Shown: positions 3,930-63,452 of the stretch, in pieces
Layout: each line of letters starts with the position of its first letter
How positions within the stretch are numbered: the first letter of the stretch is position 1
Assembly (NCBI GenBank): GCA_011109175.1
Contig: RDEW01000018.1
Coordinates: 555,304 to 619,303, forward strand
DNA from: Dicyema japonicum
Taxonomy: Eukaryota > Animalia > Dicyemida
Direction of reading: 5' to 3'
DNA length: 64,000 bases
The notes under the pieces: generated by a model
What the model saw: only the letters and a program-made list of their open reading frames with translations
Database searches by the model: none
Told to the model about the DNA's origin: nothing
Program-made: the position numbers and the translations under genes

Positions 3930-4421
3930 CAGCGTTTGCAACTTTTCGTCAACAACCGAATTTAAGAGTTCATTTCCGAGTCCTCCGTTTGTCGAGATGC
4001 TATAAATAATACCAGTTCTCACGGAAATCGATATTTCCGGCCTTCCACCGTAAAATATATTTCCACGTCTTTCACCTGCCATTCAGTGAAAGAAGTACCA
4101 GAGGAGAATATAAATTCACAGAAAAGTAAAAATACACATTCACCGTGGCCTTCACGATTGGGAATCGTCTTGTTGGTGTACTCCACATAACCCTAAATTG
4201 GAAGGTTTCGTGGTATTCCGATCTTTCTTTTTTGATAAAATCCACGCAGTGAAGCCATTCTGGTCCACATGTCCATGTCTACCGTATTCGGATAGAAGGA
4301 ACCTTCAAGTAGTCTGTGATTAATTCCTCCGCTTTCTCGACAGTAAAGTTTTCACGTGTCAAGTGAAATGATTTTTGATTTTCTTATGATTTATATCAAT
4401 CAGAAAACCAGAAACAGCCAT
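3930..4421 (-). CDS. AKAP14: A-kinase anchor protein 14 (AKAP28 family), multi-exon; 3' end approximate
   Basis: Spliced translation MAVSGF...ELITDYLK|TWTCGPEWLHCVDFIKKERSEYHETFQFRVMWSTPTRRFPIVKATVNVYF...|VKDVEIYFTVEGRKYRFP matches the family motif W...WLHCVDF...WS.PTRR.PI..AT; introns of 22-24 nt. Confidence 0.8.
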
Positions 4422-4514: not shown

Positions 4515-4612
4515 TTAGTGGTACCTCTTCTATGACAGGTGAATGACGTGGAAACATACATCACGATGAAAGGTCGGAAATGTAGATTTCCGTGAGAACT
4601 GGTAGTGCAGTG
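4515..4612 (+). pseudogene. Inverted, diverged partial copy of an AKAP14 intron-exon-intron segment
   Basis: caggtgaatgacgtggaaacatac...gatttccgtgagaactgg matches the reverse complement of about 4012-4085. Confidence 0.7.
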
Positions 4613-5429
4613 GTTATTTCTGTCGCGACTGACTATTGTTCGATTCCTTGCTTGGTCGGGGGAATCATTTTTTTTCTTTGCCTCTTTCAACACCTAAAAC
4701 ACATCATGTGTTTTACCTATCCAAGGAGACTCTTAGTGCCTGGCCTGCATACAAAAAGGATCTCACTCTTCCCTACTCCACTTGAAGGGTTCCCACAATA
4801 TTTCCAGTTTTTCCTTCTGTCGTATACAGATTAATTACTCTTGATCACTCTACATAACTGGAAGCCTCTGGTCTGGCACATCACTTGCACGAATACCTTT
4901 GTCGCAGCCAATATCCACCTGAGCGTATCCAGATTCTGCTCGGCAACTATGAAAGCCGAAAAAGAGTATGTGACTTACCCGATGGAGTGATTTTTACTAC
5001 TCTAGCTGTTTGACTTTCGGTGCCGTAGGATCCTCGACTTTGACTCGACTTGGGAGTCAGATATCTCCGCGTTCGTTGTTATTCTTTCCCCTAAAGTGAT
5101 TTTCCACTAGTCAGGAATATTTACTTGTACTCATTTCTTCACGTAAGAATATCAAAATTTTGACTTCTCCTAACCCGAGGACCTGCCCATTTGGTCCCTA
5201 ATGCCAAATTGATCCCCGAAATCTAATTCTAACATAATATAAAAATCCACCGCTTCTAAGATGGGAACCAGGCCTTTGTGATCTCCAACCGTCAGTATAT
5301 ATCATTTTTACATTATCCTGAGCCACGTATGAAAATTGTCTTTTGCCTGTTAATCGCTATTTTATAAACGCGCAAATTTACTATTTTATAAAAATTATAA
5401 AAAAAAAACGATTTATTACGTAACAAAAC

Positions 5430-6170
5430 AAACAAAAAATAAATGCATATTAATTTATCTAACAACTTCGATGTGCCTCCTCACAGTCACTGTTGATCAT
5501 TCTGCTACAATGTGTAGCCAAATGATCCACTGATTTCTTAGCCTTCTTGCAATCCTTTCTTAGCGAAATGTACGATTTTCTTTCCAATTGAGTCAAAATT
5601 GAAAAAGCATACTTTCACTTTTATGGACAATCGAAGTAAACTCCCTTCCTCGTTTAGTTGGACTAATATATAATCTTTCCTTGTTTGGGAGCTTCAGGTG
5701 AATTTTATACTCTGACAAGACACGTCGAATATCTAAGATGTGAAGAGCATTCCTTGGTTCTCCCTCATCGATTAGCTATGATAACTGTTCTTTACTTAAA
5801 ATAAAGTGTTTCCTGTCTGGGAGGAGGTATAGCTAATATGGCTCTTCCATTACCAAAACAAAAATTTGGGTAGACAATTAGTCACCTTGCAGTATTCTAC
5901 TTCCTGAGACATTGGAGACTGGATGTCCATAGTAATTTCGGAAGCCCTTCTATTGGCTAGCTTGATTTGCATGGAATGTGTCCAAGAGATAAAATGATCC
6001 TATAGCACAGGCATATGAAATGCATGTTTCGACGTACTGCAAGTAGATGGAGTTCAAGACTTTTATAACTTTCATAATTCTTTAATAATTTTAAAAAAAC
6101 AAATTCCTCGCTAAAATTCAATCTAAACGTTAAGCCAGAGTAAAGCGACCAGTTATGGAAATGCCTCAAA
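5430..6170 (-). mobile_element. Patchwork of an RLE retrotransposon fragment (5430-5745), a SINE-A tail on + (5745-5850) and a LINE thumb fragment (5860-6170)
   Basis: HLKLPNKERLYISP and VDHLATHCSRM; SINE tail motif aactgttctttacttaaaataaagtgt; QYVETCISYACA. Confidence 0.7.
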
Positions 6171-10574: not shown

Positions 10575-10860
10575 AAAAGCGTCATTGGATCTACTTAACT
10601 CAGAAAACGCTGAATGCTTGGATGGCACCAAAGAGGACCGTTCTTCCCTACTCCAGTAAGTGGAAACTGGAAACAATTAGACCAAGCGAATATTGAACCC
10701 ACAAAACCAAATCACTAAGAATCCTTAGCACACACGTTATTTATGTAAAGAACAGTTATAATAACTAATCGTACATGGAGAACCAAAGAATGCTCTTCTT
10801 TTTTCTTTTTGTTGTGTGTGAATCCTTCATAGACGATTCAGTTCCGCAGTGAAATGTTTA
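10575..10860. mobile_element. Pseudoknot-SINE fragment (+, 10579-10680) and SINE-A fragment (-, 10730-10860)
   Basis: gcgtcattggatct...ggcaccaaagaggacc; then aagaacagtt..ctaatcgta..gttccgcagtga. Confidence 0.6.
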
Positions 10861-20334: not shown

Positions 20335-20540
20335 AAGCCGCGTGACGCTATGTGGTGCTATGTGGCTAATTGGTTGTAAATTTCTTTTTTTTTTCTGATA
20401 GCGTCATTAGATCGCCTTACTCAGAAGACGCCCAATACCTGGTCGGCATTCAAAACGATCCAACTATTCTTTCCAGCGGAAGACAATTTTGTTACCTGGC
20501 GACGAGTTCCGGGTGGCATTGCAGTTTATTTCAAACTGGA
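20335..20540 (+). mobile_element. Pseudoknot-SINE (leader plus HDV-like fold)
   Basis: gcgtgacgctatgtggtgctatgtggct leader; GCGTC..GATCG..GACGCC..CGATC. Confidence 0.75.
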
Positions 20541-28439: not shown

Positions 28440-28660
28440 TAATAGGCGTTATGTGATCCCCCTATCCAAAGAGACAACCAATGTCTGGTCGACATACAAA
28501 AAAAGATTTTATTTTTCCCTATCCACCGGATGGGTTTCGTAATGGGGATATAGTGGATGAGATGCTCGGAAAGGATACGTTACACTCTTACGGTGGAACT
28601 GGGATCACTTAGTTAGTCATGGACTCTCTCTTAAACCAGGTGATCCTGGTACAATTATAA
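28440..28660 (+). mobile_element. LINE 3' tail with hairpin
   Basis: ctgggatcacttagttag...ggtgatcctgg. Confidence 0.6.
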
Positions 28661-44859: not shown

Positions 44860-45690
44860 TAAGAATCATTAATTACTGACTACTTCTCGATTAATGATGA
44901 CTATTTCTCGAATCATCAAACCACTCAAGGATCCAATTAAAACAGTTACAACCGTTACTGATACCTAAAAATAAATAATTAAATTACTGTAATAAATATT
45001 ATAAATCCATATATAATCTACTGAAAGCATAATTAACGTGACAGATGAGACAACATCACATACGAAAAATATCAAAATTACAGTTTTCTAGATTTTATAT
45101 TATTAAAACTGCTATCAATGTTTTTTATCGTATTTTCATTGAACTTGACGATGTAAACAATCGCAAAGACAATTAAAGTCAAAAAACTGAATAATTGTAA
45201 AAACTGAAGGAAACGTAGAATTTTGGGAAGCGATAAAGAATGACAGAGGAATTATTTCTAAACCCTAAAACTTAATAGAACTAAGCATATAATAGCTGCG
45301 TGGCGCCATGTGGTGTTTCGTGGCTAGTTGGTTGAAATTTTTGTTTGATCGTCTGTTCCTCCTCTCTCTTCCTATTAGAGTGGCGTCATGTGATCCACCT
45401 GTCTTGGTAGCGCTCAGTGCCAGGCCGGCACGAAAAAGGATCATTTGCTCTCCCCCACTCCATTGAAGAGGTTTCCACAACTGCAAGTATGGACGTCTTT
45501 TACCCTTTATGCTGATTCTGGATGGACTCTGTTTCTGTAGAAGTGGAAACTGGATACACTTAATTAGTTGTTTACTTTAACTTCTTTCTCGGTGTATCCG
45601 GGTTAAAAAATAAATAATGTGGTCAACCAATTCAAAAAATTCAAAAGGATTGGCAACGCCTAGAGGGCTTATAATCCAAAAATGAAAAAT
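44860..45690 (-). pseudogene. Paralog 2 of the four-TM gene, with a SINE in or near intron 1; status uncertain
   Basis: About 500 bp colinear with 43545-44045; same last exon (..SGLMIREIVIINRE..*); exon-1-like sequence near 45630-45690. Confidence 0.5.
45293..45617 (+). mobile_element. Pseudoknot-SINE, full length
   Basis: Leader, fold at 45382-45442, 3' hairpin ggatacac..gtgtatcc, A-rich tail. Confidence 0.9.
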
Positions 45691-51724: not shown

Positions 51725-52064
51725 TAATAATAATAATAATAATAAAGCCTTTTCACGAGAGCCATAGTATTTTATAGCTCCGCATAGGCAGGACACACAC
51801 TTTATTTAAGTAAAGAACAGTTAATTTTAACTAATCGTAGAACCAAAAAATGATCTTCACTTCTTTTTTTTCTTTTTCTTGTGTGAGTGTCCTTTCTAGA
51901 CAATCCGGTTCCGCAGTGAATATCCACTGATGACGGCGTCACTCGTCAAACCCTTTCTGCATCGTAGATGCGTGGAACCTTCCACCAGGTGAACAGCAGC
52001 GAGATTCGAACCCGTAGCCTAAGCCACTTAAGCCCGACACCTAACCACTAAGCCACCCGGCTGG
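51725..52064 (-). mobile_element. tRNA-SINE family A, full length with (TTA)n tail
   Basis: A box TGGCTTAGTGG, B box GGTTCGAATC; the tail reads (aat)n on +. Confidence 0.9.
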
Positions 52065-52065
52065 T

Positions 52066-52138
52066 GGTCCTCGACCGGATTCGAACCGGCAACATAGTGA
52101 CTTTTAACCACTGCTCTAAACATTGGAGTTACAAGGAC
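52066..52138 (-). tRNA. tRNA-like sequence or pseudogene with anticodon loop TTAAAAG (nominal AAA)
   Basis: Acceptor GTCCTTG/CGAGGAC, T-arm GCCGG-TTCGAAT-CCGGT, imperfect D-arm; abuts the SINE-A head. Confidence 0.5.
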
Positions 52139-53035
52139 CATATAGCTCTGCTTCCAAGATTATTTGGGTAAAGTAGCTGATGGCAGTCTCGAGGGAACTG
52201 AAGCTATCCAAGTAACGATTATTCATCTTATCTTCTGAGATTTCGCGATACAATTTCCAGTTAGCACCTTTGTAATTGTAGCTGCTAGGAATTCTCCTCA
52301 CGTTGGCCTCTCTTTTGATCTTCACCGCAATTAAATTATGGTCGCTTCTTGTTCGTAGAGGACTGACCAATCAATTTTTGATGAAAGCGACGATGAGCAG
52401 AGTAATACATCGGGTGAGGTAGGTTTATCTGTTTCTCTCAGTGGTGTCCTTGTATTTCTCGATGGATCATTCAATATCGTTAGGGAGTCCGTTTGCGATA
52501 ATAATAGTTTCCCTCTCATGCCAGCTAGTTGAGTTGACAGTCATAAGGGATGCTTCTCATTCAAATCCCCACAGATCATGATCTCATCGAAGGAAGACAA
52601 TCTTGATAGGTTTGGCATAACATAGCTCTTCGGGCAGGAACCAGGAGGCGGAACGTGGATATTCATTAGGCATAGTCTTCCTTCCGTTGTCCCGAGCGAG
52701 ATTCCAATTATTTCTGTTACATCATCATCCCCAACAAGTTTCCTCACTTACGATTAAATCTTATTAATAAAAATATTACCAAATTAATTTAAAATTTAAA
52801 TAAACTGTCTCTTGCTATGGTTATGATTGTTAATTAAACGAGTAGAACTTAATATCAAAAATACTTAACAACAGACAGGGAAGATTTATTTATTTGACGT
52901 TTACGCTTGTTAACTTGTTTTACTGGCGTTACTGCATATGGCATGAATTTTATGATTTATACACATCATTGGAAGATTTAAATAATGTTTAATTATTTAA
53001 ATTTGTTAGTATTTGAATTTAAAGTTTTTAAATTT

Positions 53036-55699: not shown

Positions 55700-56017
55700 T
55701 AGCCGCGTGTGGTGCTTCGTGGCTAATCGGTTGAAGTTTCTGTTTTGTTCGTCTGTTCCTCCTCTCTCTTCCTATTAGAGTGGGGTCATGTGATCCACCT
55801 GTCTAGGTGGCGCCCAGTGCCAGGCCGGCACGAAAAAGGATCATTTGCTCTCCCCACTCCACTGGAGGAGTTTCCACAAGTGCAACTATGGACGTCATTT
55901 ACCCTTTATGCTGATTCCGGATGGACTCTGTTTATGTAGAAGTGGAAACTGGATACACTTAATTAGTTGTTTACTTTAACTTCTTTCTCGGTGTATCCGG
56001 GGTTAATAAATAAATAA
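55700..56017 (+). mobile_element. Pseudoknot-SINE, full length
   Basis: Fold at 55782-55842; 3' hairpin; (taaa)n tail. Confidence 0.9.
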
Positions 56018-57599: not shown

Positions 57600-57885
57600 A
57601 ATCATGTGGCAACCTGATTGAATATTTCTCTTCCTTCCTGTGGCATCATTGGATCCATTTACTAGGAGACGCCCAATGCCTGGCCGGCATTCAAAGGATT
57701 CATTTATTCATTCCACCAGGAGATAATTTCGCTCCCAGGCGACGAGTTCTGGAATTGACCTAAGCTCCCCAGACAACGCTTTCTGGATCATGTACTTGGG
57801 TAAGGGTCTGTTGGAATGCGTCAGGATCAAGGAATTATTTAGTTTGGTTTTACCCTTGGTCTTTGGAATAATTTAATTTATTCAA
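57600..57885 (+). mobile_element. Pseudoknot-SINE (subfamily 2) with 3' hairpin
   Basis: GGCATC..GGATCC..GACGCC..GGATTC; tail ggatcaagg/ccttggtct. Confidence 0.75.
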
Positions 57886-58049
57886 AAAACCGACCTTCTT
57901 GGATGAACGAAACTAAGAAAGTGACAGATCTATTTATGTTACCGGTATTTGCTGCGTCCTACTTAGTAGCCGCTTGTCTCCTACAACTAGGTGAGGCCAG
58001 AGTAACTTAACTAACTTAAAAAAGGATAGTACGTAGTCTCGACACGTTT

Positions 58050-60703: not shown

Positions 60704-63452
<2,749 letters not shown>

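What the first reader, a model, noticed from the sequence alone, without database searches (positions are those of the whole stretch)
45382..45442. Short retroelement family with a covarying pseudoknot of HDV-ribozyme topology but a non-canonical core
About 9 dispersed copies (4715, 10579, 20400, 32601 on -, 37234, 45382, 55782, 57642, 58626) share a module of about 60 nt. The 32601 copy reads GGCGUC-AU-GUGAUCC-ACC-UGUCUA-GGU-GACGCC-CA-GUGCC-AGGCC-GGCAC-GAAAAA-GGAUCAU. The helix order P1-P2-P3-P3'-P1'-P4-P4'-P2' is that of HDV-like ribozymes. Pairing is kept by compensatory or wobble changes, e.g. P2 GAUCG/CGAUC at 20400 versus GAUCC/GGAUC, and P4 AUGCC/GGCAU versus GUGCC/GGCAC. The elements are about 250-330 bp, have no tRNA head, carry a LINE-type 3' hairpin, and one has a 9-bp TSD. 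HDV-like ribozymes are established at the 5' ends of R2, RTE and L1Tc/ingi elements and their short derivatives. Here P1 is 6 bp, L3 lacks the usual UCCUCG-like motif, and J4/2 is CGAAAAA or UCAAA. This could be a variant ribozyme, a catalytically dead relic, or a new structured RNA (inference).
Basis: partly seen in the sequence, partly recalled or inferred. Interest (0 to 1): 0.8.

Follow-up and report, generated by a model that had tools for sequence, protein, structure and literature searches.

The report
LINE-derived HDV-shaped pseudoknot inside SINEs
A 63-base RNA knot with the helix order of hepatitis-delta-type ribozymes, which in this genome's LINEs wraps the start codon, is also kept in the middle of several abundant short repeat families. 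The fold is real, but copies were made from uncut RNA, so it probably serves as a structural signal rather than a working ribozyme.

Summary
All nine listed copies exist, and I found more. They share a 63-nt module (45382-45444 in the named copy) whose helices P1, P2, P3 and P4 follow the HDV order. Pairing reaches 78-80% of cells against 31-45% when partners are slid, and compensatory changes exceed shuffles. This includes P2, which the alignment model did not contain.

- **Position in the short elements.** The module lies about 88 nt inside them, not at their 5' end.
- **Position in the LINEs.** The same module sits near the 5' end of APE-type LINEs. Its invariant J1/2 "AU" plus G is the first AUG there, in frame with a 2A peptide and the endonuclease.
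- **Heads.** The young families start with a copy of the LINE's first 25 nt. Older families have tRNA-type A and B boxes.

The evidence goes against a 5'-end-defining ribozyme:
- LINE A copies start 11-12 nt upstream of the predicted cut.
- Of 470 exact genomic copies, 83% keep the 5 nt upstream of the cut site and 78% the 5 nt downstream of the word.
- L3 varies freely, no Rfam model matches, and G1 mostly pairs with C.

No RNA runs exist, so cleavage is untested. This scan had already found the module on other DNA of this genome. Verdict: a new variant of a known kind, of moderate interest.

The parts
45293..45617 (+). Complete copy of the young SINE-like family F1 (about 325 bp): LINE-like head, CT-rich linker, module, body, 3' hairpin, A/T-rich tail
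   Evidence: Alignment of 30 genomic copies defines both ends. BLAST within the window finds the two sister copies.
45293..45325 (+). Head. Its first 25 nt are colinear with the first 25 nt of LINE A (19/25 identical, core 15/16). It folds as its own hairpin.
   Evidence: No tRNA was found by Rfam or ARAGORN.
45340..45381 (+). CT-rich linker between head and module. It is also present upstream of the module in the older families.
45382..45444 (+). The module: P1 45382-87, J1/2 45388-89, P2 45390-96, P3 45397-99, L3 45400-05, P3' 45406-08, P1' 45409-14, J1/4 45415-16, P4 45417-21 with 45427-31, J4/2 45432-37, P2' 45438-44
   Evidence: Read directly. CM hit of 81 bits, E 2.6e-20. Pair counts.
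45552..45617 (+). 3' hairpin (45552-59 pairs with 45591-99) and A/T-rich tail
   Evidence: Whole-element fold; alignment
32424..32686 (-). F1 copy truncated at its 5' end inside the linker. Module at 32599-32661.
55729..56017 (+). F1 copy. Module at 55782-55844, with one P1 mismatch.
37160..37437 (+). Family F2 copy flanked by a 10-bp TSD (37150-59 and 37438-47). Module at 37234-37297. It has the same head type but a different body and tail.
20400..20461 (+). F2-type module. Its P2 double change GAUCG/CGAUC is unique to this copy.
57642..57704 (+). F2-type module
10578..10642 (+). Module of an older family, with a B-box-like motif about 41 nt upstream
4601..4765 (+). Older SINE copy: tRNA-like head with A- and B-box-like motifs (about 4601-4655), linker, and decayed module from 4700
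   Evidence: Rfam and ARAGORN do not call a tRNA here.
28445..28509 (+). Decayed older module copy
   Evidence: 69 bits
58623..58686 (+). Decayed older module copy
   Evidence: 53.5 bits

Best explanation
**What it is.** The 63-nt module is the 5'-terminal RNA domain of a group of APE-type, single-ORF LINEs with an N-terminal 2A peptide. It folds into a nested pseudoknot with the helix order and dimensions of HDV-like ribozymes.

**In the LINEs.** It begins about 12 nt from the element's first base and encloses the first AUG. J1/2 'AU' plus the first G of P2 form that codon, so the fold overlaps the first 20 or so codons.

**In the SINEs.** SINE lineages captured about 100 nt of this LINE 5' region as a central domain. 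Older families placed it behind a tRNA-type head. The young, very abundant families F1 and F2 placed it behind a head that copies the LINE's own first 25 nt.

**How it works.**
- Shown: the fold is kept by compensating changes, and copies were made from RNA that still carried the sequence upstream of the predicted cut.
- Inferred: the module acts as a structural cis-signal, not as a 5'-end-trimming ribozyme. It may be a docking site for the LINE protein, or for the ribosome translating it, and the SINE RNA imitates it to get copied. Any self-cleavage is weak, lost or conditional.
For: **The fold is real.**
- 78-80% of cells pair against 31-45% when partners are slid, and double changes exceed shuffles.
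- P2 was not in the model used for alignment, yet it changes in step between lineages: GUGAUCC/GGAUCAU in F1, UUGGAUCC/GGAUCCAA in F2, GGUCC/GGACC in LINE A and GUGGUUC/GAACCAU in LINE B.
- The P2 changes between LINE A and LINE B alter amino acids, so selection acts on the RNA.
- The P1+P3 and P4 hairpins appear in the minimum-energy fold of the module alone and of the whole element.

**LINE origin.**
- The module is followed in frame by a 2A motif and an endonuclease-like sequence in L048 and L033.
- Exo_endo_phos_2 scores 28.7 bits downstream in L033, and there is a weak RVT_1 match in L048.
- The SINE head is colinear with the LINE's 5' terminus.

**The template RNA was not cut.**
- Eight LINE A copies begin 11-12 nt upstream of G1.
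- All aligned F1 copies keep the linker, and truncations fall elsewhere.
- Of 470 exact copies, 389 keep the 5 nt upstream of G1 and 366 keep the 5 nt downstream of the word.

**The core is not conserved.** L3 is two freely varying codons in the LINEs and differs between SINE families.
Against: **No direct data.** No RNA or biochemical data exist, so cleavage is neither shown nor excluded. A partly active ribozyme whose uncut fraction is the retrotransposition template would leave the same genomic traces.

**Features that still fit a ribozyme.**
- The dimensions (J1/2 2 nt, P3 3 bp, L3 6-7 nt, J1/4 2 nt, A-rich J4/2) match real HDV-like ribozymes closely.
- A C precedes the A-run of J4/2 in most lineages.
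- A subset of F1 copies has a G-U first pair.

**Limits of the sample.**
- For LINE B, 27 of 39 alignments start only 3 nt upstream of G1. This could mean a 5' end near the predicted cut.
- The docking role is pure inference.
- Independent compensatory events are few, and the sequences are related.
- Only 350 kb of the genome could be read.
Confidence: 0.55

Rival explanations
1. The module is an active, non-canonical HDV-like ribozyme. It cuts at G1 in part of the transcripts. This could free LINE RNA from read-through transcripts and leave a 6-nt leader before the AUG for cap-independent translation. Uncut molecules would be the ones copied.
For: - The topology and helix and junction lengths match HDV-like ribozymes.
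- A C followed by A-rich J4/2 occurs in most lineages, and F2 reads C+AAAA before P2'.
- A U-A pair that could form P1.1 is possible in 34 of 39 distinct rows.
- L1TcRz works with a one-pair P1.1 and is inhibited by flanking sequence (PMC3185411).
- R2 ribozymes tolerate wide variation (PMC3774820).
- LINE B alignments mostly begin 3 nt from G1.
Against: - L3 lacks any conserved C or G core and varies as free codons.
- G1 pairs with C in most lineages.
- In F1 and LINE A the only candidate C is the closing base of P4.
- No Rfam HDV-type model matches even at E up to 10.
- LINE A and all SINE copies retain upstream sequence.
Confidence: 0.2
2. The conserved element works mainly as DNA. It would be an internal promoter at the LINE's 5' end, like Pr77 of L1Tc or the proposed 'LINE promoter' heads of mollusc LP-SINEs, and the RNA fold would be secondary.
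For: - The young SINEs begin with a copy of the LINE's first 25 nt followed by a CT-rich stretch. This is the same layout as the LP-SINEs of Matetovici et al. 2016 (PMC4758252).
- In L1Tc the same 77 nt are both promoter and ribozyme (PMC3383444).
Against: - Compensatory changes in P2 and P4 are expected for RNA, not for a protein-binding DNA site.
- In SINEs the complete module lies about 88 nt inside the element, behind another head.

This reading does not exclude the best explanation.
Confidence: 0.12
3. In the SINEs the module is a passenger. It would be inherited from the LINE fragment that founded the superfamily and kept only by descent, with no role in SINE RNA.
For: - Individual genomic copies decay freely.
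- Sequence relatedness inflates shuffle tests.
Against: - The module is the most conserved block across SINE families whose heads, bodies and tails differ.
- Family-level differences keep pairing: F1 against F2 in P2 and P4, and the two commonest F1 polymorphisms are U-A/U-G and G-C/G-U.
Confidence: 0.1

Closest known systems
L1Tc / NARTc Pr77-L1TcRz 'dual system' of trypanosomes (HDV-like ribozyme plus internal promoter in the first 77 nt; PMC3185411, PMC3383444)
   Same: - An HDV-type fold lies at the 5' end of a single-ORF APE LINE whose protein starts with a 2A peptide.
- The same block is shared with short non-autonomous partners (NARTc, RIME, SIDER).
- P1.1 is minimal.
   Different: - There the ribozyme cuts exactly at +1 of the element, and activity was shown. 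Here LINE A starts 11-12 nt upstream and SINEs 50-90 nt upstream of the predicted site.
- Here the AUG lies inside the fold and the L3 core is not conserved.
- The clade of these LINEs was not determined, and no sequence comparison with Pr77 was possible.
HDV-like ribozymes of R2, R4, RTE and LOA elements (Eickbush 2010/2013, PMC3774820; Ruminski 2011, as cited in PMC5786205)
   Same: A nested double pseudoknot at LINE 5' ends. P4 and J1/2 are variable. A link with translation initiation has been proposed.
   Different: - R2 keeps P1.1, P3 and L3 nearly invariant, with a catalytic C and four other fixed bases. Here L3 varies.
- No Rfam HDV-family model matches.
- Cleavage does not define copy ends.
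LP-SINEs of gastropods and bivalves (Matetovici et al. 2016, PMC4758252)
   Same: - Short retroposons whose head is the first ~70 bp of a LINE 5' UTR, followed by a CT-rich stretch.
- They share body or tail with tRNA-derived SINEs.
- They have TSDs and 3' simple repeats.
   Different: - Their head was read as a promoter and no RNA fold was proposed.
- Here only about 25 nt of the LINE terminus form the head, and the full module lies internally.
- Their sequences are only in figures, so homology could not be tested.
SINE central conserved domains and LINE-derived SINE bodies (CORE, V, Deu, Ceph and others; Kojima 2018, PMC5786205)
   Same: A conserved central block is shared by SINE families with different heads and tails. 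Kojima showed that some such bodies come from LINE 5' regions.
   Different: - Kojima found contributions from RTE and Vingi only. He argued that 5'-terminal ribozymes should keep LINE termini out of SINE bodies.
- Here a terminal, ribozyme-shaped domain is the body.
- None of the motifs quoted for the Ceph domain occurs in it.
Schistosome Sm-alpha SINE-like elements with a hammerhead ribozyme (from my own knowledge, not checked here)
   Same: A self-cleaving-ribozyme-type fold carried inside an abundant short retroposon.
   Different: It is a different ribozyme class with a canonical, active core. Here the core is non-canonical and activity is unknown.

Membership tests
HDV-like self-cleaving ribozymes | Nested double pseudoknot with order P1-P2-P3-P3'-P1'-P4-P4'-P2' (PMC4908430) | tested here: met
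   Pair counts and controls. P2 covaries although it was not in the alignment model. Helix and junction lengths are close to HDV.
HDV-like self-cleaving ribozymes | P1.1: one or two pairs between L3 and J1/4 | tested here: inconclusive
   A U-A pair is possible in 34 of 39 rows but never varies. The second pair forms in 20 rows only.
HDV-like self-cleaving ribozymes | Conserved L3 active-site bases (metal-binding C, G of the reverse wobble) | tested here: not met
   L3 reads differently in each lineage. In the LINEs it is two varying codons.
HDV-like self-cleaving ribozymes | Catalytic C in J4/2 a few bases before P2' | tested here: inconclusive
   A C precedes 3-6 purines in most lineages. 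In F1 and LINE A the only C is the last base of P4.
HDV-like self-cleaving ribozymes | G-U wobble as the first pair of P1 | tested here: inconclusive
   G-C in 22 distinct rows and G-U in 10.
HDV-like self-cleaving ribozymes | Match to curated covariance models (HDV, CPEB3, drz families in Rfam) | tested here: not met
   No hit at gathering score, nor at E up to 10 on two families. These models do not encode pseudoknots.
HDV-like self-cleaving ribozymes | Self-cleavage 5' of the first base of P1 | not testable with these tools
   No RNA runs are held for this organism. Genomic copies derive from uncut RNA.
LINE 5'-end ribozyme that defines the element's 5' terminus (R2, L1Tc type) | Full-length copies start at the cleavage site | tested here: not met
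   LINE A copies start at -11/-12. LINE B is ambiguous at -3. SINE copies carry 50-90 nt upstream.
SINE / non-autonomous LINE-dependent retroposon | Short, abundant, flanked by TSDs, with a 3' hairpin and simple-repeat tail | tested here: met
   At least 470 copies. TSDs of 10-14 bp. Hairpin and tail.
SINE / non-autonomous LINE-dependent retroposon | Pol III head derived from tRNA, 7SL or 5S | tested here: inconclusive
   Older copies show A- and B-box motifs by eye, but Rfam and ARAGORN find no tRNA. The F1 and F2 heads are LINE-like instead.
SINE / non-autonomous LINE-dependent retroposon | 3' tail shared with a partner LINE | tested here: inconclusive
   No LINE 3' end matching the F1 tail was found in the 350 kb available.
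LP-SINEs (LINE-promoter-headed SINEs) | Head copied from the extreme 5' end of a LINE, followed by a CT-rich region, with the body shared with tRNA-SINEs | tested here: met
   19 of 25 identity from nt 1, the linker, and the shared module and downstream hairpin.
LP-SINEs (LINE-promoter-headed SINEs) | Homology to the 68-70 bp 5' domain of Nimb-17_LMi, I-3_DR and RTE-9_CPB | not testable with these tools
   Those sequences are held only as figures.

The most novel reading that the evidence does not exclude
An HDV-type double pseudoknot may have been converted from a self-cutting ribozyme into a non-cutting platform that wraps the LINE's start codon. It would mark the RNA for the LINE's own protein or for the translating ribosome. 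Several SINE families would owe their success to carrying this platform as their central domain. That would give a mechanistic role to a SINE 'conserved central domain' and provide a natural example of a ribozyme fold reused for recognition.
Probability: 0.3. Interest if true: 0.7.

Novelty: new variant of a known kind. Interest (0 to 1): 0.5.

Why it matters
**SINE central domains.** Their function has been an open question since the 1990s. Here one such domain can be traced to a defined, structured RNA at a LINE's translation start, with a fold that can be mutated and restored. That makes the question testable.

**A stated expectation.** It also runs against the expectation that ribozyme-bearing LINE termini cannot become SINE bodies (PMC5786205).

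**Either outcome is informative.**
- If the fold no longer cuts, it shows how a ribozyme scaffold can be reused.
- If it does cut, it widens the sequence space of HDV-like ribozymes and places one inside a pol III-type or LINE-promoter-type short element.

Tried and rejected
- **Rfam.** Run on the whole window at gathering score and at E up to 10 on four stretches. It found only one true tRNA gene and one weak tRNA-like hit, with no ribozyme family.
- **ARAGORN.** It found no tRNA in any SINE head.
- **Sequencing runs.** Only four DNA runs of one study are held, kept as contigs, and none is RNA. I therefore did not use read laying, because contigs cannot show RNA ends.
- **More genome sequence.** Later genome searches gave tables only.
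- **LINE clade.** Pfam on the decayed L048 ORF pieces gave only a weak RVT_1 match, so the clade stays open. The earlier notes' 'Ingi-like' and 'cephalopod' labels were not verified. An Atlas look-up of an MCM exon gave no useful taxon.
- **Literature.** Searching for four module words found nothing.
- **Partner LINE.** A search for one sharing the F1 tail found none in the sample.
- **Rejected as evidence.** The apparent compensatory P1 at L036:6392 is an inverted F1 tail nested in another copy. The GAUCG/CGAUC pair at 20400 is a single-copy event.
- **A DPE-type promoter reading of the module.** The spacing does not fit, and the copies start upstream.
- **Not used.** Complex prediction and the structure tools, because no protein-binding claim rests on a testable pair here.

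Full report
**What is there.** It lies inside a 325-bp element (45293-45617) that has two sister copies in the window, 32424-32686 on the minus strand and 55729-56017, at 93-94% identity. The other listed places (4700, 10578, 20400, 37234, 57642, 58623) share only the module and some flanking sequence, and belong to diverged families. A profile and a covariance model found further decayed copies at 28445 and 11336. The window is part of a 67.5-Mb assembly. There, an 18-nt word of the young family occurs 470 times, against 0 for the reversed control. A BLAST first look gave 1201 candidates. This scan had already noted the module at eight or more other places of the same genome. I treated those notes as leads only.

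**Is the fold real?**
- I built a covariance model containing only P1, P3 and P4, so that P2 would not be fitted. I aligned every hit in the 350 kb I could read.
- On 46 distinct sequences, 80.1% of cells pair, against 35-45% when partners are slid by 1-3 columns. Cells changed on both sides number 54, against 25.2 +/- 5.5 in shuffles (0 of 500 shuffles reach it).
- On a stricter set of 31 sequences the figures are 78.4% paired against 31-42% slid, and 29 double changes against 14.9 +/- 4.4 (2 of 500).
- P2 pairs in 72-75% of cells, and 4-5 of its 7 pairs change on both sides. This is an underestimate, because the model shifts P2' by one column in family F2.
- The clearest events are between lineages. 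P2 reads GUGAUCC/GGAUCAU in F1, UUGGAUCC/GGAUCCAA in F2, GGUCC/GGACC in LINE A and GUGGUUC/GAACCAU in LINE B. P4 reads GUGCC/GGCAC in F1 and AUGCC/GGCAU in F2 and the older families.
- The two commonest polymorphisms within F1 keep pairing (U-A/U-G and G-C/G-U).
- Two apparent examples do not count. A 'compensated' P1 at L036:6392 is an inverted SINE tail nested in another copy.
- P3 is weaker in the older families (two pairs). P1.1 can be drawn as one invariant U-A pair.
- The sequences are related and the independent events are few. The fold is therefore well supported but not proven.
- Minimum-energy folding recovers P1+P3 and P4 in the module alone and in the whole element.

**Where the module sits.**
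- In the short elements it is internal. An alignment of 30 F1 copies shows a shared head of about 33 nt and a CT-rich linker before G1. Truncated copies break at various points upstream, never at G1.
- Older families have A- and B-box-like motifs 40-110 nt upstream, although neither ARAGORN nor Rfam calls a tRNA there.
- TSDs of 10-14 bp are clear in several copies.

**The LINE connection.**
- The module also occurs at L048:270-335 and L048:4957-5020. Weaker copies lie at L033:2826-2886, L046:8843-8919 and L023:1112-1189, all on the minus strand.
- There, the invariant J1/2 'AU' plus the next G is an AUG. In L048 (LINE A) it opens a frame that runs through a 2A motif about 50 codons later and into an endonuclease-like sequence. 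In L033 the frame after the AUG is broken by one stop, then carries a decayed 2A motif and the endonuclease-like sequence.
- Pfam finds Exo_endo_phos_2 at 28.7 bits just downstream in L033 and a weak RVT_1 in L048. All these copies are broken by stops and frameshifts.
- No AUG lies between the LINE's first base and this one. The fold therefore encloses the start codon and the first 20 or so codons.
- N-terminal 2A peptides are known in single-ORF APE LINEs of the Ingi, CR1, L2, Rex1 and Crack clades, including molluscs (PMC3708506). I could not place these LINEs in a clade.
- The changes in P2 between LINE A and LINE B alter the encoded residues, which points to selection on the RNA.
- Homology between LINE and SINE continues about 30 nt past the module, into a further hairpin.
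- The first 25 nt of the F1 head are colinear with the first 25 nt of LINE A (19 of 25 identical, core 15 of 16).

**Does it cut?** I could not test this, because no RNA run is available. The indirect evidence goes against a ribozyme that sets the 5' end.
- With a query reaching 100 nt upstream, eight LINE A copies begin 11-12 nt before G1. This is exactly where an unrelated repeat ends in L048.
- For LINE B, 27 of 39 alignments begin 3 nt before G1. The L048 copy of LINE B has a rearranged leader, so this result is ambiguous.
- Genome-wide, 389 of the 470 exact F1 words (83%) keep the 5 nt upstream of G1, and 366 (78%) keep the 5 nt downstream of the word. Conservation does not drop at the predicted site.
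- In the core, L3 differs in every lineage and G1 pairs with C more often than with U. The candidate C of J4/2 sits 3-6 bases from P2' and is the closing base of P4 in F1 and LINE A. No Rfam model matches.
- In favour of a ribozyme ancestry, the helix and junction lengths are almost those of HDV. L1TcRz works with a one-pair P1.1 and is damped by flanking sequence (PMC3185411).

**Reading.**
- The best-supported account is that this is the 5' RNA domain of a LINE group, of HDV-ribozyme shape and probably ribozyme descent. SINEs captured it and keep it for its structure.
- I infer, without direct evidence, that it helps the RNA to be chosen by the LINE's protein or by the ribosome that makes it.
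- A residual or conditional ribozyme (0.2), a DNA-level promoter (0.12) and a mere passenger (0.1) remain open.

**Comparison with what is known.**
- The nearest system is the Pr77/L1TcRz block of L1Tc and NARTc, which is also linked to a 2A peptide. It differs in that it cuts at +1.
- The young families match the 'LP-SINE' layout described in gastropods and bivalves, where a conserved ~70-bp LINE 5' domain was read as a promoter (PMC4758252). I could not test whether that domain is this module.
- Kojima (PMC5786205) reported LINE 5' parts in SINE bodies only for RTE and Vingi. He expected terminal ribozymes to be excluded, so this case is an exception or an extension.

**Limits.** Only 350 kb of the genome was readable. 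The organism and the LINE clade are unverified, the partner LINE for the tails was not found, and nothing is known about expression.

Noticed in passing
L027, L031, L017, L003, L009, L013, L026 (F1 copies); window 37160-37180: Between the 5' TSD and the conserved start of the element lie 3-21 nt that differ from copy to copy. Their origin is unexplained. They could be untemplated addition, template jumps, or transcription starting in the parent's flank.
   Followed up: partly
L048:258-5130: Two decayed LINE copies of different families lie in tandem. Each starts with a similar 12-20-nt leader before the module, and an F1 SINE is inserted in reverse between them (about 4560-4895).
   Followed up: partly
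L048:276-446; L033:2618-2812 (-): 2A-type 'skipping' motifs lie about 50 codons after the AUG that sits inside the module. The motif is intact in L048 LINE A and decayed in L033 and LINE B.
   Followed up: partly
window 34107-34179 (-): A well-formed tRNA-Lys (UUU) gene, 72 bits.
   Followed up: no
window 52062-52139 (-): A weak tRNA-like sequence (34 bits, anticodon AAA). It is possibly a pseudogene or the head of another SINE family. No module lies next to it.
   Followed up: no
window 61225-62913 (+): Exons of an MCM-family replication helicase (MCM P-loop by Atlas features).
   Followed up: partly
L031:4138-4228 (-) and L031 about 5774-6025 (-): At 4138-4228 an F1-type copy appears to join the head directly to the 3' part of the module. 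At about 5774-6025 a short (about 255 bp) F1 copy is flanked by a 13-bp TSD.
   Followed up: no
L046:8843-8960 (-): A LINE-B-type module is preceded by sequence resembling the F1 SINE linker. It is possibly a recombinant or intermediate form.
   Followed up: no
window 37400-37437 and 57900-57930: Family F2 ends in a tail different from F1's (…GGTCTTTGGAATAA plus A/T repeats). The two young families may therefore use different partner LINEs.
   Followed up: no
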